This document shows, piece after piece, positions 10,761 to 50,549 of a stretch of 64,000 nucleotides of DNA. The stretch is from Hemiscyllium ocellatum (lineage: Eukaryota): NCBI RefSeq assembly GCF_020745735.1, contig NC_083410.1, positions 45,730,117 to 45,794,116 of the forward strand, given 5' to 3'. Made by a program: the position numbers and the translations under genes. Numbering within the stretch: position 1 is the stretch's first letter; every line of letters starts with the position of its first letter. The notes under the pieces were generated by a model, which was not told the DNA's origin, did no database searches, and saw nothing but the letters and a program-made list of their open reading frames with translations.

Positions 10761-10963
10761 AGCCTGAAGGCATGCTACCTCCGGAGGTCAATGTGATCAA
10801 TAGTACAGCTGTTCATGTCATCTGGACATCACCGTCAAAACCAAATAGTCTTGTCACCGAATATTCTATTCATGTGAATAAAAAGCAGCATAATACTGAT
10901 ATGCATTTACCCAGGCCTTTTATATTGACAGACCTTTATCCATTTACTGTATATATGATAAAG
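10761..10963 (+). pseudogene. USH2A: USH2A (usherin) exon, FN3 repeat; homolog of human exon 46. Frame open and splice sites intact, but part of a decayed locus
   Basis: tttatag|AGCCTGAAGG...ATAAAG|gtagga, 203 bp. Translates (E)PEGMLPPEVNVINSTAVHVIWTSPSKPNSLVTEYSIHVNKKQHNTDMHLPRPFILTDLYPFTVYMIK, versus recalled human usherin EPQGMLPPEVVIINSTAVRVIWTSPSNPNGVVTEYSIYVNNKLYKTGMNVPGSFILRDLSPFTIYDIQ. Confidence 0.93.
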
Positions 10964-11606
10964 GTAGGAGTGATTCTTTTAATATATCAAACAATATTAC
11001 AGATCAGGTATTTCATGCTTTCCAGGTCTTCTCCATGTGCATTTTAATATTTTACCTTTTTTCTATTTCAGGATTTTAGACTTGTCATACCATGCATTTT
11101 GCATTGATATAAAGCACTTTGAATTTTGACTTAGTTTTCACAGTGTAGTACAACTCTGATATGCAGTCACCAATATCTAATGCAGGCAGGCAAAGTTAGA
11201 CTACCACATGGCAGTGCACTCACACCAACTTGATTCTACATCAGATACAATATTAGTCCAACTGATGTGATGCAAAATTTTAAAAGCTGTACAATAGTCT
11301 AATAGATTGCCCCAAAAATTTAAAAGTTCATTTTAACCTGTTTGTCTGAAGGCTAGCGATCTTATTTGTGTGAAGAATTACAGTTTCCTTAAATGGATAA
11401 CAAACAGCATCCAGCAGGATAAGTCAAACCTTCCCTTCCAGTCATAACCAGCTTCAACTACATCATTCTAAACATCAATTCTATGTGTATTTTAATCAGA
11501 TTTTCATTTCTCAGTACTTATTTTTGCCTTCTGGTTTGTTATATTACTTTTGGATCTTTTTAAATATCTCTTTACAGAAGTATGACTCATCAAAATAAAT
11601 ATTTTA

Positions 11607-11752
11607 CCGTGGATGTAGGTTTGCTTGCTGAACTGGAAGATTGATTTTCAGATGTTTCCTCACCATACTAGGGAACATCTTCAGTGAACCTCTGGACAGT
11701 GAGCAAACCTACATCCAGAACCTCAACCCGAGCTACAAATCTTCTTAAAACT
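11607..11752. mobile_element. Penelope-derived fold-back fragment with a degenerate hammerhead on the - strand
   Basis: Inverted repeat ggatgtaggtttgct ... agcaaacctacatcc. The - strand at 11647-11688 reads ttca CTGAAGA ... GAAA c ATC tgaa. Confidence 0.65.
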
Positions 11753-11899
11753 TATGAATAGTTTACCGTGTTTACTGAACTTACTGTGTTCAGTCCAAAC
11801 AGCCATTAATTCTGCCCAGTAATTAAAAATAAGTATTCCTGGCACAAGTTGTTGTTTCCTACATCTCTGATACAAAATCCAATACATTGTTGCCTTTAG

Positions 11900-12055
11900 C
11901 GACTGGCTCAGTTGGTACACATTTCTGAATGAAAAAAACTTTATCAGAATTTGAGCATAGAATTCTGAGGACTTCTTCAGTGTACCAGTGACATACTGTT
12001 GTATGGTCAGAATTATGGCCTATTTAAATGGATATAAAATGAGACCCTGTTCAGA
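11900..12055 (+). mobile_element. Degenerate tRNA-headed DeuSINE-like element
   Basis: tggctcagttggta (A box) ... ttgagcata...ttcagtgtacc...ggatataaaatgagaccctg resembles the Deu domain as recalled. A similar relic lies at ~28490-28610. Confidence 0.4.
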
Positions 12056-12149
12056 GAACAGAAGAATACCAGACAGCATACACATCTGTGCAAACATACT
12101 ACTGAGTGTATGTTTGATTCTCCAAAAGACAGGAAGTATTTTGTTCAGT

Positions 12150-12273
12150 TAATCAAATTCTGGATAATCGAATGCTGGATAACATAGTTTAGCTGAGCAT
12201 TGGGACTTTGCAATCTTGCCAGATAATCCAATATTCCGATAATCAAATGCTGGATACTTGAGGTTCCTCTGTA
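12150..12273. mobile_element. Tigger/pogo-like (Tc1-mariner) MITE end
   Basis: Repeated GGATAATC motifs ending in gaggttcctctg-ta, whose reverse complement ta-cagaggaacctc is a Tigger-type TIR with a TA target. Confidence 0.55.
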
Positions 12274-12274
12274 G

Positions 12275-12790
12275 TTAGAAGCAGGCGTACACTATTTGCC
12301 CCTCAAGCACACTTCACCATTAATAACATCTTAGTGATTAATAGTAATAGTGATCAGATTGTGACCTCAACTCCATTTTACTATCGCCTTTGACTCCCTT
12401 GATGGTCAAGAGTCCATCTACTCTTGGCAATGGCTCTGCCTCCACCATACTCTGGGGAAAATAATTCTTCAGACTCATGGTTCACTGAAAGAAAAGAGAC
12501 ACTCCTCATCTCCAACTTAATTCCCTTATGTCTCCGAGCTCTAGTCTCCCCACAATGGGAAACATCCTTTCAACATCAACCCTGTCAAATCCCCTCAGAT
12601 CTTAAATCTTATCTGTTTCAGTAAGATCATCTCTCAACCTCCTAACTCCATATGATATGCACTCAAGCTGTCTAACCTTTCCTCAAAGGATAATCCCCTC
12701 ATCGCAAGAATCTGTTGAGTGAATCTTTTCTGAACAGCTTTGAATAAAATTATATCCTTTCTGAAACAAGGAGACCAAATCTGTAGTACT
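12275..12790 (-). mobile_element. Old CR1 3' fragment
   Basis: QIWSPCFRKDIILFKAVQKRFTQQILAMRGLSFEERLDSL, followed by a degenerate 3' UTR. Confidence 0.8.
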
Positions 12791-13429
12791 CTGGGTGTGC
12801 TATCCTTGCTAAATTTTAAACTAAATGTTTGCACATATTTATACTCAATGTTTTGGCATATTGTTTTTTGCAACTTGCAGTCCTTTGTTTATGTATCAGT
12901 ACAAAAGAAAAGACTGAATCTATCCTGTTCTACAAAATTCCACATCCCGTTAGGCAAATAGGCAATAGTACTTGTTTCATCAATAGATCTGCCTGCAGAC
13001 AGTGGCACCTGCTTTCTGCTTGAAGTTGTACACGTTGAACCAGGACACAGTGGGCAATCCCACAATGAATAATTGCAAAGAAATCTACAAATCACTAAAG
13101 GATATAAAACTGGTGATTATTATGAATGACTGCTATCTGTTATGTACTATTTTATATTTTCCAGTCATTCATTTTTTGAAAAGGCAGTTTTTCATGTTTA
13201 ATCATGAATCCTCCATGACTCAAAGAAAGTAGAAAGAATAAGACATTATGAATTTCCTTGGTTGTATATCACTGACTGGAATGTATAATTTGCATGCTTT
13301 CCATTTGTTTCTGAAAGTAAGAATAAGATGCATGCTTGTTGGGTTTGATTTAACGCAAAAAAATTCAAATTTTATTCAGGAATTTTTGAAAAGGTAATGC
13401 ATTTTTTGTGATCTTTTATACATAATTAG

Positions 13430-13542
13430 ATTGAGGTATGCATACTATATGGCTACACTAAAAGCAACAATACCCAAGTCACCACCCTTGAACATAAACC
13501 ATCTAATATAGCTGCACCTCATATACATGTCATGAAGTCAAG
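13430..13542 (+). pseudogene. USH2A: USH2A exon, homolog of human exon 47
   Basis: aattag|ATTGAGGTATGC...AAGTCAAG|gtaaat, 113 bp, phase-compatible with the previous exon. IEVCILYGYTKSNNTQVTTLEHKPSNIAAPHIHVMKS(R), versus human VEVCTIYACVKSNGTQITTVEDTPSDIPTPTIRGITSR; the second Cys is replaced by Tyr. Confidence 0.9.
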
Positions 13543-14790: not shown

Positions 14791-15229
14791 TACTCTAGAT
14801 CATGGTCAGGAGCACACATTTAATTAAGAAAAAGCTACCAATTAATTAGTTACATTGACACTTTTCTTTCACTTTATATTCTATTTAATTACACCTAAGG
14901 TGAGTTATTCCCATTTAATGTGTCATTTTCTTGTCTCTAAGTGGGCCACCCAATTAGTTTCCACACTGTCTGATTCAGGAGCTCAGGAGGAACCTTGCTG
15001 TACAGTTTCTAAACTAAAATTGTGATATCCTTAAAACAGAAATTAAGTATTACCACTTCAGTGACCTGCCAAGTTATGTGTCTAAGCCTCAATACCCCTA
15101 TTGCTGCCTCCAATGTCTCTTGACATGTTTGACTAGGGCAGGAGCCAGCTGTACAGGAGAAAGAGAAGGAAAGTAGCAGCACTTTCACTTCTTGTCAGGC
15201 TTTACCCCATCCTATTTATTACAGCAATC

Positions 15230-17040: not shown

Positions 17041-17099
17041 TTTGTGGGAAGTGTTCCTGCCAATTTTTGTTTTGCTTGTGAACTTCTGAGTTTTATGCA

Positions 17100-21224: not shown

Positions 21225-22640
21225 AAAATGTATTCATGGGAAATGAGTGTCGCTGACTGGGCCAGCATTTATTGCCCATTCCCAGTTGCCCTCGAGAAGG
21301 CAGAGCTAGCTGACAGGGAGGCAGTTCCTGGACTTTGATCACACTGAAAGAATGATGATATATTTCCATGTCACGATTGGGAGTGGCTTGCAGGGGAAAG
21401 TGTTCTAATGCTGCTCTTTTGCTTCAGAATGCATGTGGTTGTGAGTTTAGAAGGTGTCTTCTAAAGAGCCTCGGTGAATTTCTGCATTGCATCTTGATAT
21501 TGTATACATTACTGCTATTTACTGTCGTTGATCGAGGGAATAAATAATGGCAAATGTGCTGTCCATCAAGCAGAAAGCTTTATACTGGATACTGTCAAAC
21601 CTTTTGAGTGTTGCTGGGATTGCACTAATCCAGGTAAGTGGGAGTATTCTACCACACACATGACCTGTGCCCCTTAGATCATGTGTAGCCTTTGGGGAGT
21701 CAGGAGGCAAGTTACTCACTCCAGGATGCTTAACTTCTGACCTCCTCTCATAGTTGCAGTATTTATATGGCTCGGCCAGTCATTTTCTGGTCAATAGTAA
21801 TCCCCATCCAGACAGGATATTGATGGGGGTTTCAGTGATAGAATGTCATAGAATCATAGCATTGCTATAGCGTGAAATAGGACATTCAGCCCAATGAGTC
21901 CACACGGACCCTCTGAAGACCATTCCACTAGACTCCTCCTCCTACCCCATCCCTGTAACCCTGCATTTCCCATAGATAATCCACCTAGCCTGCACATCAC
22001 TGGACACTTAGCATGGCCAATCCATCTAATCAGCACATTGTGGACTGTGGGAGGAAACTAGAGCACCTAGAGGAAATCCATGCAGACACGGGGAGAATGT
22101 GCAAACTTCACACAGTCAGTTGTCTGAGAATGGAATCGAATCTGGGTCCCTGGCACTCTGAGACAGCAGTGCTGACCACTGAGCCATTATACCACCCTAT
22201 GATTCTATGTCGAGGGGCATTGGTTAGGTTCTCCCATATTGGATATGATCATTACTTGGTACTTGTATTGGATGAATGTTATTTGTCATGTATCAACCCA
22301 ATACTGAATATTTTCTAGGCCTTGCTGCATTGGACATGGATTGCTTCAGTATCTGAAAAGTCATGAAGGATGCTGAACATTGTATAATCAATGAGTGAAC
22401 ATCTCCAATTTTGATTTTATGATGGAGGAAGGACGTTCATAAAGCAGCTAAAGCTGTTTGGAGGACATTACCCTGAGGAACTTCTACAGAAATGTCATGG
22501 TGCTGAGCTGATAAATCACAAACAAACAAAACCATCCTCCTTTTTGAAAGCTGTTACTTCAAAGATTGTCCCATTAACTCCTGCTTCGCTAGATCTCCTT
22601 GATGTCATACATGTTTGCATGCTTCCTTCATGTCAAGGGC
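21225..22640 (-). mobile_element. CR1-group LINE (second family) 3' portion, interrupted by an HE1 SINE
   Basis: PLTWISAIPATLKRFDSIQYKAFCLMD...IYSLDQRQ (RT C-terminal region), with the family tail at 21225-21300. Sequence resumes after 22200. Confidence 0.7.
21846..22197 (-). mobile_element. HE1/V-SINE, near full length
   Basis: - strand tRNA-like head (tggctcagtggtcagcactgctgtctcagagtgccagggacccagattcgattcc), V-domain (gtgtctgcatggatttcct) and a CR1-like tail. Confidence 0.85.
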
Positions 22641-28868: not shown

Positions 28869-29548
28869 CCATAAAATAAACAGGTTATTTGGTTATTTAT
28901 CTTATTGCTGTTTCTAGGACATTGCTGTATTAGAACAATGACTACACTAAAAAAGGACAATTGAAGTGCTCTCAAATGTTTTGGGACATGCTAAAATTAT
29001 GAAAGGTATATATATAAATGTGAGTAATTTCTCTGTGCATATGGACACTAAGAACTGATACAGATATTGTACTAATGATAAGGTTGTAAAGCAGCTATTA
29101 TCTGTGTTGGTTCTCTATTGTGCCTTATAATCATACCAATTAAAACTGTAAAAGCACTAAAATATCTTTAAAGCAGTTTATTAAGTCTAATAAAAACCCA
29201 GTTATGTATGGTATCATTGTATAGATTATTTAATAATAGATGCTTGTGTCAAAATAAATAATCTCATGATATAAAACATTGGAGTAAATATCCCATACAA
29301 TTGGATAGTATTAGATATAAAATTATCACTTTGTTTATTATCTATAGTTTATGATATTTACTACAATTAATGTGGTTCATTTGCTTATATATCAGAAATT
29401 TTACAGACTGAGAAATTCTGTACTTTAGATTCGGTGCATCTCTGAATAATTTACATCCATTAAGACATTAGATGCTCCATTCTTGAAAGATGTAATGAGA
29501 TTACTATATAACATCTCTCTCTATTTTATATTTTTGTATTTTAGCAAG

Positions 29549-29743
29549 AACTCTTAGAATTGATTGGCTATCCCTAGACGACCAAATGATATCATCTAAG
29601 GATATGAAATTAGGAGAAGAACATTGCATCAATGTGTCATGTCATGAATTCAAAAGACAGATCAAAACAGTCAATAGTGTGTTTATATTCAATAAAAAAT
29701 AAATGAAAGTAACTGTGGTCAGGGATATCCTCTTATCTGCCAG
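29549..29743 (+). pseudogene. USH2A: USH2A exon, homolog of human exon 48; disrupted
   Basis: TLRIDWLS[1-bp deletion ~29574]RRPNDII*GYEIRRRTLHQCVMS*IQKTDQNSQ*CVYIQ*KINESNCGQGY..., versus human SLQIDWVSPRKPNGIILGYDLLWKTWYPC...CKAVRCQKPESICGHICY. Stops at 29597 (TAA), 29645 (TGA), 29675 (TAG) and 29693 (TAA). The putative donor reads cag|ggagtc, with no GT. Confidence 0.85.
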
Positions 29744-30878
29744 GGAGTCAAGTACTGAAATATATTAATTGTTTTGCAAATGCCATAAATTATTCTATAA
29801 ATAGAAGACTGAAGGGAGTTGTTTTGATACTTGAGGCAGAATCTTGAGATTACAATCCCTCGTGGAAAAGCAGGACCATTTTTGGATCAGGATACCAATT
29901 TACTGGTCTAAGCAATACCAATGCTCTTTCCCAGACTAAGACAAGCATCATCTGGTTTCTGGGTTTGCCAAACTCACCATATTGGATGTTGAATGGATTT
30001 TTTTCCTGTTCTCTGAGAACAGCAGGAGGCGGCCTGACAACACCACCAACATTTTTGTGCACAACTCTCCTCTGACCATCAAATCTTGGTGTCCTTTCCA
30101 ATTTGCTTCTTAAATATCCATTTCATCAGATAACACTCATGCACATCTCTTGCTCTTTTGACCTTTTGCACCCTTTTGCTCACAGTTACTTCCTACAAAT
30201 ATTAACCCTTTATCTTTAGCAATAATTTGAACTCTCACTAACTGTTTAAATTTTCTGATTGTAGGAGATCGTCCACCCCCTCCAAGGGAGAAATTGAGTA
30301 CTGTTGGTGGACCCATGGAAACCATGATGTGGAGGTTCCATTGTTGGATGGGGATGGATAAGGTCAGAAGTTGCACGAGACCAAGTTATAGTCCAACAGG
30401 TTTATTTTCGGAACACTGTTCCTTTGTCAGGTGAAGTGTGGCCACCATTGAGAAGGAAACCCTGGAGATAACATCGTATAGCAGCTCAGGCTGTTGTTGA
30501 TGGGGAGAGGAGTGATCCAGAGGCCTGATGACAGCATTCAATATCACATTAGCACTTGGCTCTTAAATTGTGCCTTTGTTAAATCAGTGTCACTGTATAT
30601 TAGTTGTCGTGATCTGCATTATACTAATTTGGAATCTAATTTCACCTGCCTCATGACTGACTTGTGCCTCACAGAATTCCAGTGCTGGTGGTGACAGAGA
30701 AGACAGGAGGAGTCTAGGAGGTCCCCTGACGAGTCCCAGCACTGTGATTCCTGTACAACTTCCATTAGCACAGATACATATACCTTGTGAGTCTAACCTC
30801 AACAAAAGACAAAGTGGCATACAGTAAAAAGCACTTTATACATGAGCAAGTGTGAGCAATGGGCACAGAGGCAGCAGT

Positions 30879-31138
30879 AGCGCCAGGGACGCAGGTTCGA
30901 TTCCAGCCTTGGTCGACTGTCTGTGTGGAGTTTGCACATTCTCCCTGTGTCTGCATGGGTTTCCTCCTCCAGTCCAAAGATGCGCAGATCAGGTGAATTG
31001 GCCATATTAAATTGCCCATTGTATTAGGTGTGTTAGTCAGAAGAAAATGGGTCTGGTTGGGTTACTCTTTAGAGAGCCAGTGTGAATTGTTGGGCCGAAG
31101 GGCCTGTTTCTACACTATAGGGAATTTAATCTAATCTA
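30879..31138 (+). mobile_element. HE1/V-SINE (5' end clipped)
   Basis: agcgccagggacgcaggttcgattcc (B box), V-domain and a tail ending aatctaatctaa. Confidence 0.88.
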
Positions 31139-35264: not shown

Positions 35265-35433
35265 GTTTGCTGTGATGGAGTGCTGTACAGCAGTCAGCCA
35301 GGCTATGCTTGCTGTGAAGACAGATACATTGTGTCAAGTTTGAATTCCTTCGTAGTTTGTTGTGGTGGGTTTCTCCACACTTTACAACCTGGATTTCACT
35401 GTTCTGGGACTTACTACATCAGAGTTCTGCCAG
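35265..35433 (+). pseudogene. USH2A: USH2A exon, homolog of human exon 49 (Cys-rich region); acceptor mutated
   Basis: 169 bp, VCCDGVLYSSQPGYACCEDRYIVSSLNSFVVCCGGFLHTLQPGFHCSGTYYIRVLP, versus human VCCNGVLYNPKPGHRCCEEKYIPFVLNSTGVCCGGRIQEAQPNHQCCSGYYARILP. Donor cag|gtaggc is intact; the acceptor reads aatcg| (CG instead of AG). Confidence 0.92.
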
Positions 35434-36135: not shown

Positions 36136-37391
36136 ACTTCACTTCGCATTGCACCAGATCTCGGGTTTCCCCCTCACATCGCACCAATACTCGGATACTC
36201 CCCCCAACACTGCTCCAAAACTCAGTATTCCCCCTCACATCGCTCCAATACTCGGGTATTCCCCCCAACACCGCTCCAAAACTCAGTATTCCCCCTCACA
36301 TCGCTCCAATACTCGGGTACTCCCCCTCACACCGCTCCAAAACTCGGTATTCCCCCTCACATTGCTCCAATACTCTGGTATTCCCCCTCACATTGCTCCA
36401 ATACTCGGTATTCCCCCTCACAACACTCCAATACTCAGCTATTCCCCCTCACACCACTCCAATACTTGGTATTCCCACTCACATCGCTCCAATACTCCGG
36501 TATTCCCCCTCACATCGCTCTAATACTTGGTATTCCCTCTCACACTGCTCCAGTACTCGGGTATTCCCCCTCACATTGCTCCAATACTCCGGTATTCCCC
36601 CTCACATCGCTTCAATACTCTGGTATTCCCTCTCACACTGCTCCAATACTCAGGTATACCCCCTCACACCGCTCCAATACTCGGGTATTCTCCCTCACAT
36701 CCTTCCAATACTCGGGTATTCCCCCTCAGCCCACTTCAATACTCAGATTACCCCCTCAAATTGCTCCAATACTCGGGTATTCCCCCTCAGCCCGCTCCAA
36801 TACTCGGGTATTCTCCCTCACATCCTTCCAATACTCGGGTATTCCCCCTCAGCCTGCTTCAATACTCGGGTTACTCCCTCAAATCGCTCCAATACTTGGG
36901 TATTCCCCCTCAGCCTGCTCCAATACTTGGGTATTCCCCCTCAGCCCGCTTCAATACTCGGTATTCCCCCTCACATCGCTCCAATACTCGGGTATTCCCC
37001 CTCACATCGCTCCAATACTCAGGTATTCTCCCTCACACTGCTCCAATACTTGGGTATTAACATTCGCATCGCTCCAATACTCGGGTATTCTCCCTCACAT
37101 CGTTACAATACACGGGTTTCCCCCTCACACCAATCCAAAACTCGGATTTCGCCCTCACACCTCTCCAATACTCCAGTATTCCCCCTCACACCGCTCCAGT
37201 ACTCGGGTGTTCCCCCTCACACCTCTCCAATAATCGGATTTCACCCTCACACCGCTCCGATACTCAGTTATTTCCCTCACAATGCTCCAATACATGGGTT
37301 TCCCCCTCAGAACACACCAATACTTGGGTTACCCCTTACACCACTCCAAGACTTGGTTATTTCCCTCACAATGCTCCAATACTCAGGTTTC

Positions 37392-37582
37392 CTCAGCGAG
37401 TCGTGAGTTCATGGAATGCCCTGCCAGTGGCAGTGGTGGACTCTCCCTCTTTATGGGCATTTAAACGGGCATTGGATAGGCATATGGAGGATAGTGGGCT
37501 AGTGTAGGTTAGATGGGCTTGGATCGGCGCAACATTGAGGGCCAAAGGGCCTGTACTGCGCTGTTTATTTCTATGTTCTATG
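37392..37582 (+). mobile_element. CR1 3' fragment inside the minisatellite, copy 1 (5'-deleted)
   Basis: ctcagcgagtcgtgagttcatggaatgccctgcc...ttctatgttctatg, near-identical to copies 2 and 3. Confidence 0.9.
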
Positions 37583-40500
37583 ATACTCAGGTTTGGCCCT
37601 CACACCATTCCGATACTCGGTTATTCCCATCACACCTCAGCAATACTCAGGTTTCCCCCTCACAATGCTCCAGTACTCGGGTTTCCCCCTTAACCAGCTT
37701 CAATACTCGGGTATTCCCCATCACACCACTCCAACACTCGGGTATTCACCCTCACATTGCACCAATTCTCGGGCATTCACCCTCACAATGCTTCAATACT
37801 CGGGTTCCCCCCCCCCCACCCTATTCCAATACTCACGTCTCCCACTCACACCACTGAAATACTCGGGTTTCCCCCTCACATCGCTTCAATACTCAGGTTT
37901 CCCCCTCCCACTGCTCCAATACTCGGTATTCTCCCTCACATCACTCCAGTACTCAGGTTTACCCCTCTCATCGCACCAATACTCGGGTATTCCCCCTCAG
38001 CCTGCTCCAATACTCGGGTACTCCCCCTCACATCGCTTCAATCCTCGGGTTTCCCCCTCACCCCGCTCCTGTACTCGGGTCTCCCTCTCACACCGTTCCA
38101 ATACTCAGGTTTCCCACGCACATCGCTCCAATATTCAGGTTTCCCCCTCACACCGCTTCAATACTTAGGTATTCCCCCTCACATTGCTCCAATACTCGGG
38201 TTTCCCCCTCACACTGCCCCAATACTCGGGTATTCTCACTCGCATCACACCAATACTCGGGTATTGCCCCTTAGCCCGCTTCAATAATCGAGTATTCCCC
38301 TTCAGCCCGCTCCAATACTTGGGTTAGCCCCTCACATCGCACCAATACTCAGGTATTCACCCTCAGCCCGCTCCAACACTCAGGTATTCTCCCTCACATC
38401 GCTTCAATACTCGGGTATTCCCTCTCACACCACTCCAGTACTCGGTATTCCCCCTCACATCGCTCCAATACTCGGGTATTCCCCCTCATACTACTCCAAT
38501 ACTCAGGCATTCCCCCTCACACCACTCCAATACTCCAGTATTCCACCTCACATCGTTTCAATACTCGGGTATTCCCTCTCACACCGCTCCAATACTCGGG
38601 TATTCCCCCTCACTCAGCTCCAATATTCGGATTTTCCCCACACACCGCTTCTATACTTGGTTATTCACCTCACAACGCTCCAATATGCGTGTTTCCCCGC
38701 CTTGCACCACTCCAGTATGCGGGTTTCCCCCTCACACTGCTCCAATACTCGGGTTACCCCCTCACATCGCTCCAATACTCGGGTACTCGCCCTCAGACTG
38801 CTCCAATACTCGGGTTTCACCCTCACATCGCACCAATACTCAGGTATTCCCCAACAGCCCGCTCTAATACTCGGGTACTCCCCCTCACATTGCACCAATA
38901 CTCGGGTATTCCACCTCACACCGCTCGAATACTCGGGTTTCCCCCTCACATTGCTCCAATACTTGGGTTTCCCACTCATACTCCTCCAATACTCGGGTTT
39001 CACCCTCACATCACACCAATACTCGGGTATTCCCCCTCAGCCTGCTCCAATACTCAGATATTCCACCTCAGCCCGCTTCAATACTCAGGTTTCACCCTCA
39101 CATCGCTCCAACACTCGGGTATTCCCCAACAGCCCGCTCCAATACTCGGGTTTCCCCCTCACTCCGCTCCAGTACTCGGTTATTCCCATCACACTGCTCC
39201 AATACTCAGTATTCCCCATCACATCGCAGCAATACTCAGGTTTCCCTCTCACACCGTTCCAGTACTCCGGATTCCCCCTCACACTGCTCCAATACTCGGG
39301 TTTCCCCCTTACCCTGCTCCAATACTCAGGTATTCTCCCTCACACCGCTTCAATACTCTGTTATTCCCCTCACAATGATCCAATACTCGGGTATCCCCCT
39401 CACATTGCACTAATACTCAGATATTCCCCCTCACATCGCTCCAATACTCAATTTCCCACTCACACCGCTCCAATACTCGGGTTTCCTCCTCATACCCCTC
39501 CAATACTCAGGTTTCTCCCTCAAATCACCCCAATAATCGGGTTTCCCCCCCACACTGCACCAATACTCGGGTATTCTCCCTCACATCGCTCCAATACTCG
39601 GGTTTCCCCCTCACACTGCTCCAGTACTCGGGTATTCTCACTCGCATCGCACCAATACTCGGGTATTCTCCCTCACATTGCTCACAGCACGGCATTCCCC
39701 CTCACACGGCTCCAGTACTCGGGTATTCCCCCTCACACCGCTCCAGTACTCGGGTATTCCCCCTCACACCGCTCCAGTACTCGGGTATTCCCCCTCACAC
39801 CGCTCCAATACTCGGGTTTCGCCCTCACACCACTCCAATACTCAGGTATTCCCTCTCACATTGCACCAATACTTGGGTATTCCACCTCATACCGCTCGAA
39901 TACTCGGGTTTCCCCCAACACTGCTTCAATACTCTGGTTTCCCACTCATACCTCTCCAATACTCGGGTTTCACCCTCACATCACACCAATACTCGGGTAT
40001 GCCCCCTCAGCCCGCTCCAATACTCGGGTTTCCCCATCACACCGCTCCAATACTTGGGTTACCCCCTCACACCACACTAATACATAGGTTACCCCCTCAC
40101 ATCGCTCCAATACTCGGGTATTCCCTCTCACATAGCTTCAATACTCGGGTTTTCCCATCACCCCGCTCCAGTACTTGGGATTCCCCCCTCACATCACATC
40201 AATACTCGGGTTTCCCCCTCACACCGCTGCAATACTCGGGTTTCCCCTCACACCGCTCCAATACTCGGTTATTCCCCCTCACACCACTCCAATACTTGGG
40301 TTTCCCCCTCACATCGCACCGATACTCAGGTTTGCCCCTCCCACTGCTCCAATATTCAGTATTTTCCCTCACATTACTTCAATTCTCGGTATTACCCCTC
40401 ACACTGCTCCAACACTCAGGAATTCCCCCTCACACTGCTCCAGTACTCGGATTTCCCCCTCACATCGATCCAACACTCGGGTATTCCCCTTCACATCGCT

Positions 40501-41326
40501 TCAATACTCGGGTATTCCCCTTCAGCCCGCTTCAATACTCAGGTTTCACCCTCACATCTCACCAATACTTGGGTATTCCCCCTCACCCCACTCCAATACT
40601 CGGGTATTCCCCCCCTCATCGCTCCAATACTCAGGAGTTCCCCCTCACACCGCTCCAATACTCGGGTATTCTCCTTCACACTGCCCCAATACTCGGGTAT
40701 TAACACTCGTATCGTTCCAATACTCATGTTCCCCCCTCACACCTCTCCAATACTCCGGTATTCCCCTTCACACCGCTCCAATACTCGGGTTTCCCCCTTA
40801 CCCTGCTCCAGTACTCCGGTTTCCCCCTTACCCTGCTCCAATACTCGGGTTTCCCCCTTACCCTGCTCCAATTCTCAGGTATTCTCCCTCACACCGCTTC
40901 AATACTCTGTTATTCCGCTCACAATGATCCAATACTCGGGTATCCCCCTCACATTGCACCAATACTCAGATATTCCCCCTCACATCGCTCCAATACTCTT
41001 GTATTCCCCTTCACAACGCTCCAGTACTCGGGTATTCCCCCTCACACCGCTCCAATACTCGGGTATTCCCCCTCACTCTGCTCCAATATTTGGGTTTCCC
41101 CCTCACTCTGCTCCAATATTTGGGTTTCCCCCTCACACCGCTCCAATACTCGGGTTTCACCCTCACACCGCTCCGATACTCAGTTATTTCCCTCACAATG
41201 CTCCAATACATGGGTTTCCCCCTCAGACCACTCCAATACATGGGTTACCCCCTTACACCACTCCAAGACTTGGTTATTTCCCTCACAATGCTCCAATACT
41301 CAGGTTTCCCCCCTCACACCACCCCA

Positions 41327-41647
41327 ACTTGATAGAGGTGTACAAGATGATTAGGGGTCTAGATAGGGTTGACCATGAGAACCTTTTTCCACGTGTGCAG
41401 TCAGCTATTAATTAAGGGTTGGTAGGTATAGGACAGATGTTAGGGGTAGATTCTTTACTCAGCGAGTCGTGAGTTCATGGAATACCCTGCCAGTGGCAGT
41501 GGTGGACTCTCCCTCTTTATGGGCATTTAAACGGGCATTGGGTAAGCATATGGAGGATAGTGGGCGAGTGTAGGCTCGGTGGGCTTGGATCGGCGCAACA
41601 TTAAGGGTCAAAGAGATGTACTGCGCTGTATTTGTCTATGTTTTATG
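41327..41647 (+). mobile_element. CR1 3' fragment inside the minisatellite, copy 2
   Basis: LIEVYKMIRGLDRVDHENLFPRV plus 3' UTR and tail; 321 bp. Confidence 0.92.
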
Positions 41648-44282
41648 ATACTCAGGTTTGGCCCTCACACCGTTCTGATACTCAGTTATTCCCATCACAC
41701 CTCAGCAATACTCGGGTTCCCCCCTCCCACTGCTCCAATACTCGGTATTCCCCCTCATACTCCTCCAATACTGGGGTTTCCCCGTCGCATGGCCCCAATC
41801 CTCAGGTTTCCCCCTCACACTGCCCCAATACTCAGGTATTCACACTCGCATCACACCAATACTCGGGTATTCCCCCTCAGCCCGCTCCAATACTCGGGTT
41901 TCCCCCTCAGAACGCTCCAATACTCGAGTATTCCCCCTCACACTGCTCCAGTACTCAGGTTTCCCCCTCACATCGCACCAATACTCAGGTATTCATCCTC
42001 AGCCCGCTCCAACACTCGGGTATTCCCCTTCACATCGCTTCAATACTCGGGTTTCCCCCTCACTCTGCTCCAGTACTCGGTTATTCCCATCACACTGCTC
42101 CAATACTCAGTATTCCCCATCACACCGTAGCAATACTCAGGTTTCCCTCTCACACCGTTCTAGTACTCCAGATTCCCCCTCACACTGCTCCAATACTCGG
42201 GTTTCCCCCTTACCCCGCTCCAATACTCAGGTATTCTCCCTCACACTGCTTCAATACTCTGTTATTCCCCTCACAATGATCCAATACTCGGGTATCCCCC
42301 TCACATTGCACCAATACTCAGATATTCCCCCTCACATCGCTCCAATACTCAATTTCCCACTCACACCACTCCAATACTCGGGTTTCCTCCTCATACCCCT
42401 CCAATACTCAGGTTTCTCCCTCACATCACCCCAATACTCGGGTTTCCCCCCAAACTGCACCAATACTCGGGTATTCTCCCTCACATCGCTCCAATACTTG
42501 GGTATTCTCCCTCACAACGCTCCAATACTCGGGTTTCCCCCTCACACAGCTCCAGTACTCGGGTATTCCCCCTCACACCGCTCCAGTACATGGGTATTCC
42601 CCCTCACAACGCTCCAATACTCGGGTTTCCCCCTCACACGGCTCCAGTACTCGGGTATGCTCACTCGCATCGCACCAATACTCGGGCATTCTCCCTCACA
42701 TTGCTCAAAGCACGGCATTCCCCCTCACACGGCTCCAGTACTCGGGTATTCCCCCTCACACCGCTCCAGTACATGGGTATTCCCCCTCACAACGCTCCAA
42801 TACTCGGGTTTCGCCCTCACACCACTCCAATACTCGGGTATTCCCCCTCACTCCGCTCCAATATTCGGTATTCCCCCTCACACCGCTTCTATTATTGGTT
42901 ATTCACCTCACAATGCTCCAATACGCGTGTTTCCTCTCCTTCACCCCACTCCAATATGCATATTTCCCCCTCACTCCGCTCCAATAATCGGGTTTCGCCC
43001 TCACACCACTCCGATACTCAGTTATTTCCCTCACAATGCTCCAATACATGGTTTTCCCCCTCAGACAACTCCAATACTTGGGTTACCCCCTTACACTGCT
43101 CCAAGACTTGGTTATTCCCCTCACAATGCTCTAATACTCAGGTTTCCCCCTCATCCCACCCCGATACACAGGTTTCGCCCTCACACCACTCTGATACTCG
43201 GTTATTCCCATCACACCGCTCCAATACTCAGTATTCCCCCTCATACCACAGCAATACTCAGGTTTCCCTTTCACACCGCTCCAGTACTCCGGATTCCCCC
43301 TCACACTGCTCCAATACTCGGCTTTCCCCCTTACCCCGCTCCAATACTCAGGTATTCTCCCTCACACCACTTCAATACTCTGTTATTCCCCTCACAATGC
43401 TCCAACACTTGGGTTTCCCCCTCACATCGCACCAATACTCGGGTATTCCCCCTCACATCGCTCCAATACTCAAGTTCCCACTCACACCGCTCCAATACTC
43501 GGGTTTCTCACTCACATCACCCCAATACTCGGGTTTCCCCCCACACTGTACCAATACTCAGGTATTTTCCCTCACATCGCTCCAATACTTGGGTATTCCC
43601 CCTCACATCGCTCCAATACTTGGGTTTCTCCCTCACACCACTCCAGTACTTGGGTTTCACCTCACATCGCACCAATACTCAGGTTTCCTCCTCCCACTGC
43701 TCCAATACTCGGTATTCTCCTTCACATTACTCCAATATTCGGGTTTCCCCCTCATACCACTCCAATACTCGGGTATTCCCCCTCACATCGCTCCAATACT
43801 TGGGTTTCCTCCTCACATCACTCCAATACTCAGGAATTCCCCCTCACACCGCTCCAGTACTCGGGTATTCTCCCTCACACTGACCCAATACTCGGGTATT
43901 AACACTCGCATCGCTCCAATACTCATGTTTCCCCCTCACACTGCCCCAATACTCGGGTATTAACACTCGTATCGCTCCAATACACATGTTTCCCCCTCAC
44001 ATCGCCCCAATACTCGGGTATCCCCCTCACACCTCTCCAATACTCTGGTATTCCCCTTCACAACGCTCCAGTACTCGGGTATTCCCCCTCACTCTGCTCC
44101 AATATTTGGGTTTCCCCCTCACACCGCTCCAATACGCGGGTTTCCCCCTCACTCCGCTCCAATAATCGGGTGTCACCCTCACACTGCTCCGATACTCAGT
44201 TATTTCCCTCACAATGCTCTAATACATGGGTTTCCCCCTCAGACCACTCCAATACTTAGGTTTCCCCCCTCACACCACCCCA

Positions 44283-44603
44283 ACTTGATAGAGGTGTACA
44301 AGATGATTAGGGGTCTAGATAGGGTTGACCACGAGAATCTTTTTCCACATGTGCAGTCAGCTATTAATTAAGGGTTGGTAGGTATAGGACAGATATTAGG
44401 GGTAGATTCTTTACTCGGCGAGTCATGAGTTCATGGAATGCCCTGCCAGTGGCAGTGGTGGACTCTCCCTCTTTATGGGCATTTAAACGGGCATTGGATA
44501 GGCATATGGAGGATAGTGGGCTAGTGTAGGTTAGATGGGCTTGGATCGGCGCAACATTGAGGGTCAAAGACATGTACTGCGCTGTATTTTTCTATGTTCT
44601 ATG
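44283..44603 (+). mobile_element. CR1 3' fragment inside the minisatellite, copy 3
   Basis: 321 bp, with the same junctions and the same internal deletion as copy 2. Confidence 0.92.
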
Positions 44604-47600
44604 ATACTCAGGTTTGGCCCTCACACCGTTCCGATACTCAGTTATTCCCATCACACCTCAGCAATACTCGGGTATTAACACTCACATCGCTCCAATACTC
44701 ATGTTTCCCCCTCACATCGCTTCAATACTCGGGTTTCCCCCTCACATCGCACCAATACTCAGGTATTCATCCTCAGCCCGCTCCAACACTCGGGTATTCC
44801 CCTTCACATCGCTTCAATACTCGGGTTTCCCCCTCACTCCTTCCAGTACTCAGTTATTCCCATCACACTGCTCCAATACTCAGTATTCCCCATCACACAG
44901 CAGCAATACTCAGGTTCCCCTCTCACACCGTTCCAGTACTCCGGATTCCACCTCACACTGATCCAATACTCAGGTTTCCCCCTTACCCTGCTCCAATACT
45001 CAGGTATTCTCCCTCACACCGCTTCAATACTCTGTTATTCCGCTCACAATGATCCAATACTCGGGTATCCCCCTCACATTGCACCAATACTCAGATATTC
45101 CCACTCACATCGCTCCAATACTCAATTTCCCACTCACACCACTCCAATACTCGGGTTTCCTCCTCATACCCCTCCAATACTCAGGTTTCTCCCTCAAATC
45201 ACCCCAATACTCGGGTTTCCCCCCACACTGCACCAATACTCGGGTATTCTCCCTCACATCGCTCCAATACTTGGGTATACTCCCTCACATCGCTCCAATA
45301 CTCGGGTTTCCCCCTCACACTGCTCCAGTACTCGGGTATTCTCACTCGCATCGCACCAATACTCAGGTATTCTCCCTCACATTGCTCACAGCATGGCATT
45401 CCCCCTCACACGGCTCCAGTACTCGGGTATTCCCCCTCACACCGCTCCAGTACATGGGTATTCCCCCTCAGACCGCTCCAGTACTCCGGTGTTCCCCCTC
45501 ACACCGCTCCAATACTCGGGTTTCTCTCTCACACCACTCTAGTACTTGGGTTTCGCCTCACATCGCACCAATACTCAGGTTTCCTCCTCCCATTGCTCCA
45601 ATACTCGGTATTCTCCTTCACATTACTCCAATATTCGGGTTTCCCCCTCATACCACTTCAATACTCGGGCTTCCCCCCCACATCGCGCCGATACTCGGGT
45701 ATTCCCCCTCACATCACTCCCATACTCAATTTCCCACTCACACCGCTCCAATACTCAGGTTTCCTCCTCATACCCCTCCAATACTCGGGTTTCCCCCTCA
45801 CATCGCCCCAATACTTGGGTTTCCACCTACACTGCCCCAATACTCGGGTTTCCCCCTCACATCGCCCCAATACTCGGGTTTCCACCTACACTGCCCCAAT
45901 ACTCGGGCTTCCCCCTCACACTGCACCAATACTCGGTATTCTCCCTCACACCACTCCAATACTCGGGTTTCCCCCTCACATCGCTACAATACTCGGGTTT
46001 CCCCCTCACATCACACCAATACTCGGGTTATCACTTCACACCACTCCAATACTCGGTATTCCCCCTCACATCGCTCCAATACTCCGGTATTCCCCCTCAT
46101 TTCACACCAATACTCGGGTTTCCCCCTCACACCGCTCCAATACTTGGGTATTCCCTGTCACACAGTCCCAATACTCAGTTATTCCCCCCCACACCGCTCC
46201 AATACTCTGGTTTCTCTATCATTCCGCTCCAATACTCCATTATTCCCCTCACAATGCTCCAATAATCGGGTTTCCCTCTCACACCACTCCAATACTCGGG
46301 TTTCCCCCACATCACTCCAATACTCCGGTTTCCCTATCATACCACTCTAATACTCTGTTATTCCCCTCACAACACTCCAATACTCAGGTTTCCCCCTCAC
46401 CCCACTCCAATACTTGGGTTTCTCCCTCACATCTAACCAATACTCGTGTTTCCTACTCGTACCCCTCCAATACTCGGATTTCCCCCTCACACCACTCCAA
46501 TACTCGGGTATTCCCCCCTCACACTGCTCCAATACTCAGGTTTCCCACTCATACCACCCCAATACTCGGGTTTCCCCCTCACATTGCTCCAACACTCGGG
46601 AAGTCCCCCTTAAGCCGCTCCAGTACTCGGGCTTCCCCCTCACATCGATCCAATACTCGGGTATTCCTCCTCATACCCCTCCAATACTCGGGTTTCCCCA
46701 TCACACCACTCCAATACTTGGGTTACCCCCTCACACCACACTAATACTTAGGTTACCCCCTCACATCGCTCCAATACTCGGGTATTCCCTCTCATATCGC
46801 TTCAATACTCGGACTTTCCCCTCACCCCGCTCCAGTACTTGGGTTTCCCCCTCACATCACACCAATACTCGGGTTTCCCCCTCACACCGCTGCAATACTC
46901 AGGTTTCCCCTCACACCGCTCCAATACTCGGTTATTCCCCCTCACACCACTCCAATACTCGGGTTTCCCCTCACATCGCACCGATACTCAGGTTTGCCCC
47001 TCCCACTGCTCCAATATTCGGTATTTTCCCTCACATTACTTCAATACTCGGTATTACCCCTCATACTGCTCCAACACTCAGGAATTCCCCCTTAAGCTGC
47101 TCCAGTACTCGGGTTTCCCCCTCACGTCGATCCAATACTCGGGTTTCCCACTCACATCGATCCAATACTCGGGTTTCCCCTCACATCACTCCAATACTCC
47201 GGTTTCCCTATCATACCACTCTAATACTCTGTTATTCCCCTCACAATGCTCCAATACTCAGGGTTTCCCCCTCACCCCACTCCAATACTCAGGTTTCCCC
47301 CTCACATCGATCCAATACTCGGGTTTCCCTCTCATCCCACTCCAATACTCGGGTTTCCCCCTCACATCACTCCAGTACTCGAATTTCCCTACCACACTGC
47401 TCCAATATCCGGAGATCCCCCTCACACCACTTCAGTACTCGGTTATTTCCCTCACACCGCTCCAATACTGCGGTTTCCCTATCATACGTTCCAATGTTTG
47501 GGTTTTCCCCTCACACCGCCCCAATACTCGGGTTACCCCCTCATATCGCCCCAATACTCATTTATTCCCCTCACAATGCTCCAATATGTGGGTTTCCCCC

Positions 47601-49982
47601 TCACATCGCTCCAATACTCATTTATTCCCCTCACAATGCTCCAATACATGGTTTTCCCCCTCAGACCACTCCAATACTCGGGCTACCCCCTTACACCGCT
47701 CCAAGACTTGGTTATTCCCCTCACAATGCTCCAATACTCAGGTTTACCCCTCACATCACCTCGATACTCAGGTTTCGCGCTCACATCGCTCCGATACTCG
47801 GTTATTCCCATCACACCGCAGCAAATCTCAGATTTCCCCTCACACTGTTCCAATACTCAGTATTCCCCCTCACACTGTTCCAATACTCAGAATTCCCCCT
47901 CACACTGCTCCAATACTCAGGTATTCTCCCTCACATCACTCCAATACTCGGGTTTCCCCCTCACATCGCTCCGATGCTGGGGTTTCCCCCCCACACCGCT
48001 CCAATACTCGTTATCCACCTCGCACCAGTCCGATACTTAGATTTTGCTCTCACACCACTCCAATACTCAGATTTCCCTCCCACACTACTTCATACTTGAG
48101 TTTCCCCCTCACACCACTCCAATACTGGGTACTGCCCCTCACACCGCTGCAATACTCAGTATTCCCTCTCATACCACTCCAGTACTCGGGTATTCCCCCT
48201 CACTCCGCTCCAATAATCGGGTTTCGCCCTTACACCGCTCTGATACTCAGTTATTTCCCTCACAATGCTCCAATACTCGTGTTCCCCCCCCCACACCACT
48301 CCACTATGCGGGTTTCCCCCTCACTCCGCTCCACTATGCGGGTTTCCCCCTCACATCGCTCCAATACTCATCTATTCCCCTCACAATGCTCCAATATGTG
48401 GGTTTCCCCCTCAGACCACTCCAATACTCGGGCTACCCCCTCACAACGCTCCAAAACTTGGTTATTCCCCTCACAATGCTCCAATACTCAGGTTTACCCC
48501 TCACACCACCCCAATACTCAGGTTTCGCCCTCACATCGCTCTGATACTCGGTTATTCCCATCACACCACTCCAATACTCAGTATACACCTCACACCGCTC
48601 CAATACTCAGCATCCCGCTCACACTGCTCCAATACTCAGTATTCCCCCTCACACCGCTCCAATACTCGGGTTTCCCCCTCACACCGCTCCAATACTTGGG
48701 TTTCCCCCTCACACCGCTCCAATACTCGGTATTCCCCCTCACACCACTCCAATACTCAGGTATCCCCCTCACACCACCCTAATACTCAGTATTCCCCCTC
48801 ACACCACTCCAGTAATCGATACTCCCCCTCACACCACTCCAATACTCAGTATTCCCCCTCACACCGCTCCAATACTCAGTATTGCCCCTCACACCACTCC
48901 AATACTCAGGTTTCCTCCTCACACCGCTCCAATACTCGGTATTCCCCCTGACATCGCTCCGATACTGGGGTTTCCCCCTCACACCGCTCCGATACTTAGA
49001 TTTCGCGCTCACACCGCTCTAATACTCAGGTTTCCCTCCCACACTGCTCCATACTTGAGTTTCCCCCTCGCACCATTGCAATACTTAGGGTTGCCTCTCA
49101 CACTGCTCCGATACTTGGGATCCCCTTCACACTGCTCCAATACTCATTTGTCCTCTTCACATTGCTCCAGTACTCAGGTTTCTGCCTCATGGTGCGCCAA
49201 TACTCAGCTTTCCCCCTCACATTGCTCCAATGCTCAGGTTTTACCCTCATGGCGCTCCATTACTTGGATTTACCCTCACACTTTTCTGGTATTCTAGTTT
49301 CCTCTCACACAGCTCCATCACTCACTTTTCCCCTCACACCATTCTGGTATTCGTGTTTCCCTCTCACACCATTCAGGTATTCGGGTTTCCCCATCACTGC
49401 GCTCCAATCTTTGGGTTTCCTTTCAGGTAGTTCCAGAGCACTCGGGTTTCCCTCTCACACTGCTCCGGTATTCGGGTTTTCTCTCATGCCGCCCCAGGAT
49501 CGTTGAGAGAAAAATTAGAAGAGGTTGAAAAAGAACAGGTGGAGCAGAGGAGCGCCAGCTGAAGCATCCTACACTGCTGCTGTCTTTGGCCACGTGAATA
49601 ATCCTCTCTGACAAAACAACTGGCACAATGAGGCAGCTGAATTAGTTTTACGTTTTTATATTACACTGTTGTGCTTATTTGATGTTTGGAAGGGTGAGAC
49701 ATTAATAGCATGAAAATGTTTTATGTTTTTTCTCAAGGGGCTAATAACCTTAAATTTCAGCCAATGGAAGTTTAATATTCAGTGACTGTTCTTCATATTA
49801 ACTCAGCATTTTGAATTTGAGATTGTAAAATTAGATTCAACTTTCCCCTTTCAAAACCTCCACATAAAATAGTGTGATCAGAAACTGTTTTTCTTAATTT
49901 CTGATCTTATGCTTCTTTTTTCTTCTACTAAGCTCATTCTAAATGTAAGATTATCAATAACATTTGCCATTTGAAGTTGATG

Positions 49983-50193
49983 GAGAAAGTGAGGTCTGCA
50001 GATACTGGAGATCAGAGCTGAAAATGTGTTGCTGGAAAAGCGCAGCAGGTCAGGCAGCATCCAAGGAGCAGGAGATTCGACGTTTTGGACATAAGCCCTT
50101 CATTCCTGAAGAAGGGCTTATGCCCGAAACGTCGAATCTCCTGTTCCTTGGATGCTGCCTGACCTGCTGCGCTTTTCCAACAACACATTTTTA
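49983..50193. mobile_element. Young Penelope-derived fold-back element
   Basis: Long near-perfect inverted repeat (aaaatgtgttgctggaaaagcgcagcaggtcaggcagcatccaagg / ccttggatgctgcctgacctgctgcgcttttccaacaacacatttt). It produces the mirror ORFs on both strands. Confidence 0.85.
50102..50137 (+). ncRNA. Minimal type I hammerhead ribozyme (Penelope type)
   Basis: ATTC-CTGAAGA-A-GGGC-TTAT-GCCC-GAAA-C-GTC-GAAT: stem I AUUC/GAAU, core CUGAnGA and GAAA, stem II GGGC/GCCC, palindromic ACGU stem III and a GUC cleavage triplet. Confidence 0.8.
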
Positions 50194-50340
50194 GCATTTG
50201 AATTTGATGTCAGGTAAAATTGCTTGAGAAATATATCATGTGATACGATAGCTCTAAGAATATTTGCAAGATTTTATAACACTCTTCCATGTCGTAGGGT
50301 TACTTTGATCTCTTAAAATGTGTTCGATATTTACTTCCAG

Positions 50341-50549
50341 GTGAGGGTTACTGCATGAATATGCAACAAAATCAAACTTCTATTTGAATTGGAGATTTGT
50401 GTTACAGGAGACAATCACACTTTAAAGGAGGTGACCAGATCTGTCGTGGAAATTCCCTTCATGATGACTTTAATCAACAGTGCTTTGGCAAGCAGCTAGT
50501 TCACACAGATCTTTTGTGCTGCAGCATCGAAGAGTAAGGGAACATGTAC
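50341..50549 (+). pseudogene. USH2A: USH2A exon, homolog of human exon 50; two stops, 3' end cut by a Rex1 insertion
   Basis: ttccag|GT GAG...: GEGYCMNMQQNQTSI*IGDLCYRRQSHFKGGDQICRGNSLHDDFNQQCFGKQLVHTDLLCCSIEE*GNMY, versus human GEVCCPDEQHNRVSVGIGDSCCGRMPYSTSGNQICCAGRLHDGHGQKCCGRQIVSNDLECCGGEEGVVY. TGA at 50385 and TAA at 50535, then a (GT)n tail. Confidence 0.88.

What the first reader, a model, noticed from the sequence alone, without database searches (positions are those of the whole stretch)
10761..50549. A dead usherin (USH2A) gene with intron-exon structure intact in a shark
Seen in sequence: five collinear, phase-compatible exons; three (203, 113 and 169 bp) have the sizes I recall for human exons 46, 47 and 49. 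They carry many independent lesions: one frameshift, six stops, a CG acceptor, a lost donor, a LINE insertion, and erosion of paired cysteines (CC to CS, YC, CY, CR, CF). Established knowledge: long-isoform usherin forms the USH2 complex with ADGRV1, WHRN and PDZD7 at hair-cell ankle links and the photoreceptor periciliary region. Inference: with this many lesions and normal multi-kb introns, this is an old, non-processed pseudogene. It may be a unitary loss of a deafness/blindness gene in this lineage, or a decayed duplicate. I cannot tell which from this window, nor whether it has been reported.
Basis: partly seen in the sequence, partly recalled or inferred. Interest (0 to 1): 0.85.

Follow-up and report, generated by a model that had tools for sequence, protein, structure and literature searches.

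The report
Decayed usherin (USH2A) exons in shark
This shark DNA holds five exons of the Usher-syndrome gene USH2A, still in their original order and separated by normal introns but broken by stop codons, a frameshift and lost splice sites that two related species share; it is an old dead stretch of the gene, though whether an intact copy survives elsewhere in the genome could not be tested.

Summary
Observation confirmed. Five collinear + strand exons match residues about 3038-3335 of shark usherin, which correspond to human USH2A exons 46-50. They lie at 10761-10963, 13430-13542, 29549-29743, 35265-35433 and 50341-50549.

Exons 1, 2 and 4 keep open frames. Exon 3 has a 1-bp deletion, four stops and a GG donor. 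Exon 4 has a CG acceptor. Exon 5 has two stops. Seven of 24 cysteines conserved across vertebrates are lost. Fifteen of 75 gnathostome-invariant positions are changed, against 0-6 in functional orthologues.

The sequence sits inside the shark clade on a branch 3-20 times longer than the others. Independent runs of the same species reproduce exon 3 exactly. Two related species, about 3% diverged, share three of its four stops and show no indel in it. The decay is therefore real, fixed and old, by a rough estimate 4-8 times older than that species split.

It is a non-processed pseudogene. I could not test whether it is a unitary loss or a dead duplicate, and I favour unitary at about 0.6. Only long-isoform exons were seen. 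The LINE pieces are intronic and are not exon lesions. No report of USH2A loss in sharks turned up in the papers searched.

The parts
10761..10963 (+). Pseudo-exon homologous to human USH2A exon 46 (203 bp; FN3 domain). AG acceptor, GT donor, open frame.
   Evidence: Pfam fn3, E = 8.7e-8; 76% identity to Cetorhinus usherin 3038-3108. Three gnathostome-invariant residues are changed (Y>H, G>R, Q>K).
13430..13542 (+). Pseudo-exon homologous to exon 47 (113 bp). AG/GT sites and an open frame. Two of the three cysteines present here in lamniform sharks are replaced, one of them (C>Y) at a gnathostome-invariant position.
   Evidence: 54-70% identity to sharks, against 76-89% among sharks.
29549..29743 (+). 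Pseudo-exon homologous to exon 48 (195 bp; 199 in human). It has a 1-bp deletion at about 29568-29572, four in-frame stops (29597, 29645, 29675, 29693), one codon missing, and GG at 29744-5 in place of the donor.
   Evidence: identical in two independent runs of the species. The stops at 29645, 29675 and 29693 are shared by two related species. The stop at 29597 is CAA in those relatives.
35265..35433 (+). Pseudo-exon homologous to exon 49 (169 bp; Cys-Cys repeat region). The frame is open, but the acceptor dinucleotide at 35263-4 is CG and one CC has become CS.
   Evidence: weak Galaxin_repeat hit; 79% identity.
50341..50549 (+). Pseudo-exon homologous to exon 50 (209 bp). Stops at TGA 50385 and TAA 50535. 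CC changed to YC, CY, CR and CF. The GT donor runs into a (GT)n microsatellite.
36160..49264 (.). 13-kb minisatellite with a 30-31 bp unit, inside the intron between pseudo-exons 4 and 5. C-rich on the + strand.
   Evidence: TRF: period 30, 431 copies, 72% matches; composition, autocorrelation peak at 30.
50856..51353 (-). LINE fragment (C-terminal domain ORF) about 300 bp downstream of pseudo-exon 5. It is intronic and does not disrupt an exon.
   Evidence: PF09004, E = 1.2e-14. Other LINE RT pieces lie at 7251-7745 and 54781-55224 on the + strand (RVT_1, E about 1e-10).

Best explanation
The window holds a 40-kb stretch of a non-processed usherin (USH2A) pseudogene covering the equivalents of human exons 46-50. 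These exons encode one whole FN3 domain, the first part of the next, and the conserved Cys-Cys repeat region that follows, all part of the long isoform. The exons keep their ancestral order, phases and multi-kb introns but can no longer yield a protein. Exon 3 carries a frameshift, four stops and a dead donor. Exon 4 has no AG acceptor. Exon 5 carries two stops. All five exons, including the ORF-intact ones, have drifted at positions that are invariant in functional usherins. Constraint was lost long before this species split from two related species that share the lesions. I think it most likely that this is the orthologous USH2A locus itself, meaning a unitary loss of at least long-isoform usherin in this shark lineage (reportedly bamboo and epaulette sharks). 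That last step is inference, not shown.
For: Identity as usherin:
- Exon 1 retrieves usherins first among 1.84 billion representatives.
- There are five collinear tblastn matches to residues 3038-3335 of shark usherins.
- Exon sizes and phases match the human gene.
- The ML tree places the sequence inside the shark clade (support 94/99) on an end branch of 0.37, against 0.02-0.11 for the other sharks.

Decay:
- Six stops, a 1-bp deletion, a GG donor and a CG acceptor.
- 15 of 75 gnathostome-invariant positions are changed, against 0-6 in leave-one-out tests of 12 functional orthologues. 7 of 24 conserved cysteines are lost, with none lost in the five orthologues printed.
- Every exon is less like shark usherins than those are like each other.

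Not an artefact:
- Contigs of runs from two studies match exon 3 with 0 differences.
- At least five further samples hold the locus.

Old:
- Two relatives about 3% diverged share three of the four exon-3 stops and have no indel there.
- All 5 in-frame differences between the species are non-synonymous, and the exon diverges at least as fast as its flanks.
- In simulation, the six stops and an excess amino-acid distance of about 0.15-0.22 fit a neutral divergence of about 0.08-0.13.

Leaning unitary:
- USH2A appears as one gene per species in nearly all vertebrates listed.
- The ancestral intron-exon layout is kept over 40 kb.
- No usherin of 2871 aa or more from any carpet shark appears in the protein database, while seven other chondrichthyans have one.
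Against: No tool could search the rest of this genome, so an intact USH2A elsewhere is not excluded. Synteny (ESRRG, KCTD3) lies outside the window, and neighbouring exons 45 and 51 are not in it. The database argument is weak, because batoid usherins are missing too, which points to incomplete coverage, and the length filter hides short-isoform models. The estimated age, 4-8 times the split from the relatives, is at the upper edge of what a loss confined to one shark order allows. The species identity rests on another agent's note.
Confidence: 0.6

Rival explanations
1. It is a decayed partial segmental duplicate. An old copy of part of USH2A, at least 40 kb with exons 46-50, was duplicated within the shark lineage and decayed, while the intact functional USH2A sits at its syntenic locus elsewhere in this genome.
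For: Duplicated pseudogenes are in general commoner than unitary ones. The high estimated age (neutral d about 0.08-0.13 against about 0.02 per lineage since the split from the relatives) is easier to fit if the copy could start decaying at any time. An earlier, unchecked note reports another 'fossil' of a giant FN3 + laminin-EGF gene on a different piece of the same genome, which could mean more than one usherin-like relic. A few teleosts do carry two usherin genes (Labeo rohita).
Against: No second copy was seen by any search. Usherin appears as one gene per species in every chondrichthyan and nearly every other vertebrate listed. No long usherin model from carpet sharks is in the database. 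The tree puts the sequence inside crown sharks, so it is not an ancient paralogue.
Confidence: 0.27
2. The gene is still functional but has dropped these exons. Splicing from exon 46 straight to exon 51 would remove 690 nt (113+199+169+209) in frame. Usherin could then persist without the start of the second FN3 domain and the Cys-Cys region, or only as the short isoform from exons 1-21.
For: Exon 1 keeps perfect splice sites and an open frame. The four following exons, at ancestral lengths, sum to a multiple of three. The short isoform lies outside the window and was not examined.
Against: Exon 1 itself shows relaxed constraint: 75-81% identity to sharks against 84-91% among sharks, and three changes at gnathostome-invariant residues. 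The region that would be skipped is conserved from lamprey to mouse, with 24 conserved cysteine columns. Two RNA runs of the species hold none of the exon-1 region, although their tissue is unknown.
Confidence: 0.08
3. It is an assembly or sequencing artefact: the stops and the frameshift are errors in this assembly.
For: None found. One of the matching runs may be the sample the assembly was built from.
Against: Contigs from two different studies match exon 3 with 0 differences, and two other species carry three of the same stops.
Confidence: 0.01

Closest known systems
Usherin (USH2A) of other sharks, e.g. Cetorhinus maximus XP_078412490, Carcharodon carcharias XP_041063177, and the Scyliorhinus canicula, Mustelus asterias, Heterodontus francisci and Pristiophorus japonicus models
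   Same: Same protein region (residues about 3038-3335), same domain order (FN3, then the Cys-Cys repeats), collinear exons. The sequence falls inside the shark clade.
   Different: Those are full-length open models that are 81-88% identical between shark orders here (95% within Lamniformes). The window is only 68-71% identical, with 6 stops, a frameshift, two dead splice sites and 7 lost conserved cysteines.
Human USH2A exons 46-50 (NM_206933), the long-isoform part mutated in Usher syndrome type 2A and recessive retinitis pigmentosa
   Same: Exon sizes of 203, 113 and 169 nt and the same phases. The human exon ends at c.9258, c.9371 and c.9570 fit exons of 113 and 199 nt.
   Different: The window's third exon is 195 rather than 199 nt (a 1-bp deletion plus one codon). 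Its fifth exon is 209 nt. The human gene is functional.
Relaxed or decayed USH2A in blind subterranean mammals (Forward Genomics screen, PMC4948712)
   Same: USH2A is among the vision genes showing raised divergence where constraint on sight is relaxed.
   Different: There it is raised divergence in animals with degenerate eyes. Here it is outright disablement in a shark lineage that, from general knowledge, has working eyes, ears and lateral line.
EYS, another large extracellular photoreceptor protein known to be missing in mouse (PMC5155541 abstract)
   Same: A large retinal-disease gene that some vertebrate lineages do without. An unchecked first-reader note (s1-178319) says EYS is also a pseudogene in this same genome.
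   Different: It is a different gene family (EGF/LamG). The EYS claim for this genome was not tested here.

Membership tests
USH2A / usherin gene (orthologue-derived sequence) | Best similarity is to usherin rather than to other FN3 proteins | tested here: met
   Exon 1 against 1.84 billion representatives gives top hits of 5121-5376 aa, named usherin in shark, lamprey, Ciona and a crinoid. tblastn identities to shark usherins are 48-81%.
USH2A / usherin gene (orthologue-derived sequence) | Collinear exons with the gene's own sizes and phases | tested here: met
   Five exons in order, of 203/113/195/169/209 nt, with compatible phases. The human 113- and 199-nt exons are confirmed from published splice variants.
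USH2A / usherin gene (orthologue-derived sequence) | FN3 domain followed by the conserved Cys-Cys repeat region | tested here: met
   Pfam fn3 on exon 1. The alignment shows 24 conserved Cys columns, of which the window keeps 17.
USH2A / usherin gene (orthologue-derived sequence) | Syntenic position between ESRRG and KCTD3 | not testable with these tools
   The window lies wholly inside the gene. Exons 45 and 51 are not even within it.
Non-processed (intron-bearing) pseudogene | Disabling lesions in sequence homologous to coding exons | tested here: met
   Six stops, a 1-bp deletion, a GG donor and a CG acceptor, confirmed in independent runs for exon 3.
Non-processed (intron-bearing) pseudogene | Introns retained (not a retrocopy) | tested here: met
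   Introns of 2.5, 16, 5.5 and 14.9 kb separate the exons.
Non-processed (intron-bearing) pseudogene | Neutral evolution of the former coding sequence | tested here: met
   15 of 75 invariant positions are changed, against 0-6 in orthologues. Between the species and its relatives, 5 of 5 in-frame differences are non-synonymous, and exon divergence is at least that of the flanks. The sample is small.
Unitary pseudogene (true gene loss) | No intact copy elsewhere in the genome | not testable with these tools
   No whole-genome search is available. The only indirect hint is that no long carpet-shark usherin is in the protein database.
Unitary pseudogene (true gene loss) | Functional orthologue in related lineages | tested here: met
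   Open models of 4760-6054 aa exist in six other chondrichthyans, plus a 3417-aa Pristiophorus model.
Unitary pseudogene (true gene loss) | Lesions shared by related species (fixed, not a private allele) | tested here: met
   Two relatives about 3% diverged share the stops at 29645, 29675 and 29693 and show no indel in exon 3. The stop at 29597 is private to this species. Only exon 3 was tested.

The most novel reading that the evidence does not exclude
Long-isoform usherin was lost outright early in the carpet-shark lineage (bamboo and epaulette sharks, perhaps more), possibly together with EYS. These sighted, hearing sharks would then be natural knock-outs of a major human deaf-blindness gene. 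Their hair-cell ankle links and photoreceptor periciliary complex would have to work without usherin or with a substitute.
Probability: 0.5. Interest if true: 0.7.

Novelty: new member of a known kind. Interest (0 to 1): 0.55.

Why it matters
USH2A is the commonest cause of Usher syndrome type 2 and a leading cause of recessive retinitis pigmentosa. Full-length models turned up here in other chondrichthyans, bony fishes and tetrapods, as well as lamprey and a tunicate. A lineage of sharks with working eyes, inner ears and lateral line that has lived for perhaps 100 million years or more without long-isoform usherin would be a natural experiment. It could show what compensates at the periciliary membrane and at the ankle links, and whether the partners ADGRV1, WHRN and PDZD7, or EYS, decayed with it. 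If an intact copy exists elsewhere, this is just an old dead duplicate of modest interest. I found no report of USH2A loss in cartilaginous fishes in the papers searched.

Tried and rejected
Only exon 3 could then be laid, so exon 5 and the CG acceptor of exon 4 are unverified in reads and in the relatives.
- A search for the window's own exon-1 ORF and its shark relatives in the 5.8-billion-protein set found a single unrelated Logan ORF.
- The short Logan ORFs from the representative search are closest to bird or mouse usherin (one, P0062, marginally to Callorhinchus) and none is closest to a shark, so they say nothing about a second copy.
- A sensitive tblastn for neighbouring exons 45 and 51 found nothing in the window.
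- Pfam scans of other long ORFs found only LINE reverse-transcriptase pieces.
- The apparent stop at the end of exon 2 was rejected as a lesion. It is the intronic GTAA after the donor.
- The acceptor at 29543-4 was rejected in favour of the AG at 29547-8, which restores the frame of the first six codons.
- Dating against the carpet-shark timescale was left rough, because the species are coded and the split date of the relatives is unknown to me.
- An RNA search found no RNA run holding exon 1, but only two small RNA runs of unknown tissue were available.
Full report
WHAT IS THERE

Exon 1 (10761-10963) is a clean 203-bp exon with a polypyrimidine tract and AG acceptor, a GT donor and an open frame. 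Its translation is an FN3 domain (Pfam fn3, E = 8.7e-8). I searched it against 1.84 billion representative proteins. The best hits are proteins of 5121-5376 aa, which the sources name usherin: Cetorhinus maximus XP_078412490, Petromyzon, Ciona and a crinoid.

tblastn of the basking-shark usherin on the window gives five collinear + strand matches to residues 3038-3335. I set the boundaries by reading the splice sites:
- Exon 1, 10761-10963, 203 bp.
- Exon 2, 13430-13542, 113 bp.
- Exon 3, 29549-29743, 195 bp.
- Exon 4, 35265-35433, 169 bp.
- Exon 5, 50341-50549, 209 bp.

Phases follow on correctly from exon to exon. Published human splice variants c.9258+1G>A and c.9371+1G>C (PMC8232728) and c.9570+1G show that human USH2A has consecutive exons of 113 and 199 nt at this position. 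Residue numbering through mouse fits human exon 46 starting at c.9056, though that part rests on my memory. The five pieces are therefore the counterparts of human exons 46-50.

THE LESIONS

- Exons 1 and 2 have open frames and good splice sites. The stop that tblastn shows after exon 2 is the intronic GTAA.
- Exon 3 is wrecked. After six in-frame codons (TLRIDW), five bases stand where two codons should be, so one base is deleted at about 29568-29572. Four stops follow: TAA 29597, TGA 29645, TAG 29675 and TAA 29693. One codon is missing near the end, and the donor position reads GG (29744-5).
- Exon 4 is open, but its acceptor dinucleotide is CG (35263-4) and no AG lies in the stretch just upstream.
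- Exon 5 has stops at TGA 50385 and TAA 50535.

The LINE pieces are RVT_1 at 7251-7745 and 54781-55224 and a LINE C-terminal domain at 50856-51353 on the minus strand.

IS IT MORE THAN A FEW UNLUCKY MUTATIONS?

I aligned the window with 16 usherins.
- Of 75 positions invariant in all 15 other gnathostomes, the window has changed 15. The same leave-one-out test gives 0-6 for the 12 functional orthologues tested.
- Of 24 conserved cysteine columns, the window has lost 7. None is lost in the five orthologues printed.
- Every exon, including the three with open frames, is less similar to shark usherins than those are to each other. For exon 1 the figures are 75-81% against 84-91%, with Y>H, G>R and Q>K at invariant sites.

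The whole stretch has therefore been drifting, not just the two exons with stops.

WHERE IT COMES FROM

An ML tree puts the window inside the shark clade (support 94/99), separate from Callorhinchus and the bony vertebrates. Its end branch is 0.37, against 0.02-0.11 for the six sharks. It is therefore not an ancient paralogue. It derives from the shark usherin gene and then sped up. Its place among shark orders is unresolved, and no carpet-shark or batoid usherin was available for comparison.

REAL, FIXED AND OLD

Public runs of the same (coded) species from at least two studies and several samples hold the locus. Contigs from two studies match 29420-29880 with no difference.

Two related species hold the same stretch at about 3% divergence.
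- Both carry the stops at 29645, 29675 and 29693, and neither has an indel within exon 3.
- Only the stop at 29597 is private to this species. The relatives read CAA there.
- All five in-frame differences between the species are non-synonymous, and the exon differs at least as much as its flanks: 6/195 and 7/195 in the exon, against 4/263 and 7/263 in the flanks.

A simple neutral simulation on these codons shows what fits the data. Six stops, and an excess amino-acid distance of roughly 0.15-0.22, fit a neutral divergence of about 0.08-0.13 per site. The divergence accrued per lineage since the split from the two relatives is about 0.015-0.025. Constraint was therefore lost several times further back than that split, on the order of 100 million years. 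That figure is rough, because the species are coded and I have no date for their split. Carpet sharks as an order are put at about 204 Myr (PMC8529718), which would be the ceiling for a loss confined to that order.

UNITARY LOSS OR DEAD DUPLICATE?

I could not settle this. No tool searches the rest of the genome. The syntenic neighbours lie far outside a window that sits wholly inside this very large gene, and exons 45 and 51 are not in it.

Points for a unitary loss:
- Usherin appears as one gene per species in nearly all vertebrates listed.
- The ancestral layout is kept over 40 kb.
- Searches of the 5.8-billion-protein set with two regions of shark usherin return long models for Cetorhinus, Carcharodon, Heterodontus, Mustelus, Scyliorhinus, Pristiophorus and Callorhinchus, but none for any carpet shark.
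- Another agent's note (s1-236396) calls this genome 'a bamboo-shark relative'.

That evidence is weak, because batoid usherins are missing from the database too and the length filter hides short models.

Points for a duplicate:
- The age estimate is rather high.
- An unchecked note reports another 'fossil of a giant FN3 + laminin-EGF gene' on a different piece of this genome (s1-172511). This could be the 5' part of the same gene, or a second relic.

I put unitary loss of at least the long isoform at about 0.6, a dead duplicate at about 0.27, and a still-working gene that skips these exons or makes only the short isoform at about 0.08. Skipping exons 47-50 would remove 690 nt in frame, but the drift seen in exon 46 argues against that reading.

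EXPRESSION

Two small RNA runs of the species hold none of the exon-1 region. Their tissue is unknown, so this says little.

WHAT IS KNOWN

Full-text searches found no paper linking USH2A or usherin to loss in sharks or rays. The catshark sensory-genome paper does not mention it. USH2A shows raised divergence in blind subterranean mammals (PMC4948712). An unchecked first-reader note says EYS, another large photoreceptor matrix gene, is also a pseudogene in this genome (s1-178319). If both hold, co-loss would be worth a proper study.

VERDICT

The reading as an old, non-processed USH2A pseudogene is supported and now extends to three species. Whether the animal truly lacks usherin remains to be shown.

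Noticed in passing
window 36160-49264: A 13-kb minisatellite with a 30-31 bp unit (about 430 copies, 72% matches). It is strongly C-rich on the + strand (C 39%, G 13%) and fills most of the intron between pseudo-exons 4 and 5. It gives long spurious ORFs in several frames.
   Followed up: partly
window 30880-31030 (+), 56754-56922 (+), 22070-22157 (-), 51477-51548 (-), 7898-7937 (-): An interspersed short repeat (SINE-like; 72-88% identity between copies) recurs on both strands. Its translation gives the recurring '...LAWPIHL...' motif seen in the ORF lists.
   Followed up: partly
window 50550-50572: A (GT)n microsatellite begins exactly at the donor GT of pseudo-exon 5.
   Followed up: no
window 35265-35433 and aligned usherins: The usherin region after this FN3 domain is a run of Cys-Cys dipeptide repeats conserved across the gnathostomes aligned. 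It gives a weak Pfam 'Galaxin-like repeats' hit (PF24748, E = 0.002, below the cut-off), and the same family is precomputed for a few full-length usherins in the database lists.
   Followed up: partly
protein database lists: No batoid (skate or ray) usherin of 2871 aa or more appears either, although several sharks and a chimaera do. This is either a gap in database coverage or a hint worth checking separately.
   Followed up: no
window 29597: The first stop of pseudo-exon 3 (TAA) is private to this species. Both related species read CAA, so new stops are still accumulating after the split.
   Followed up: yes
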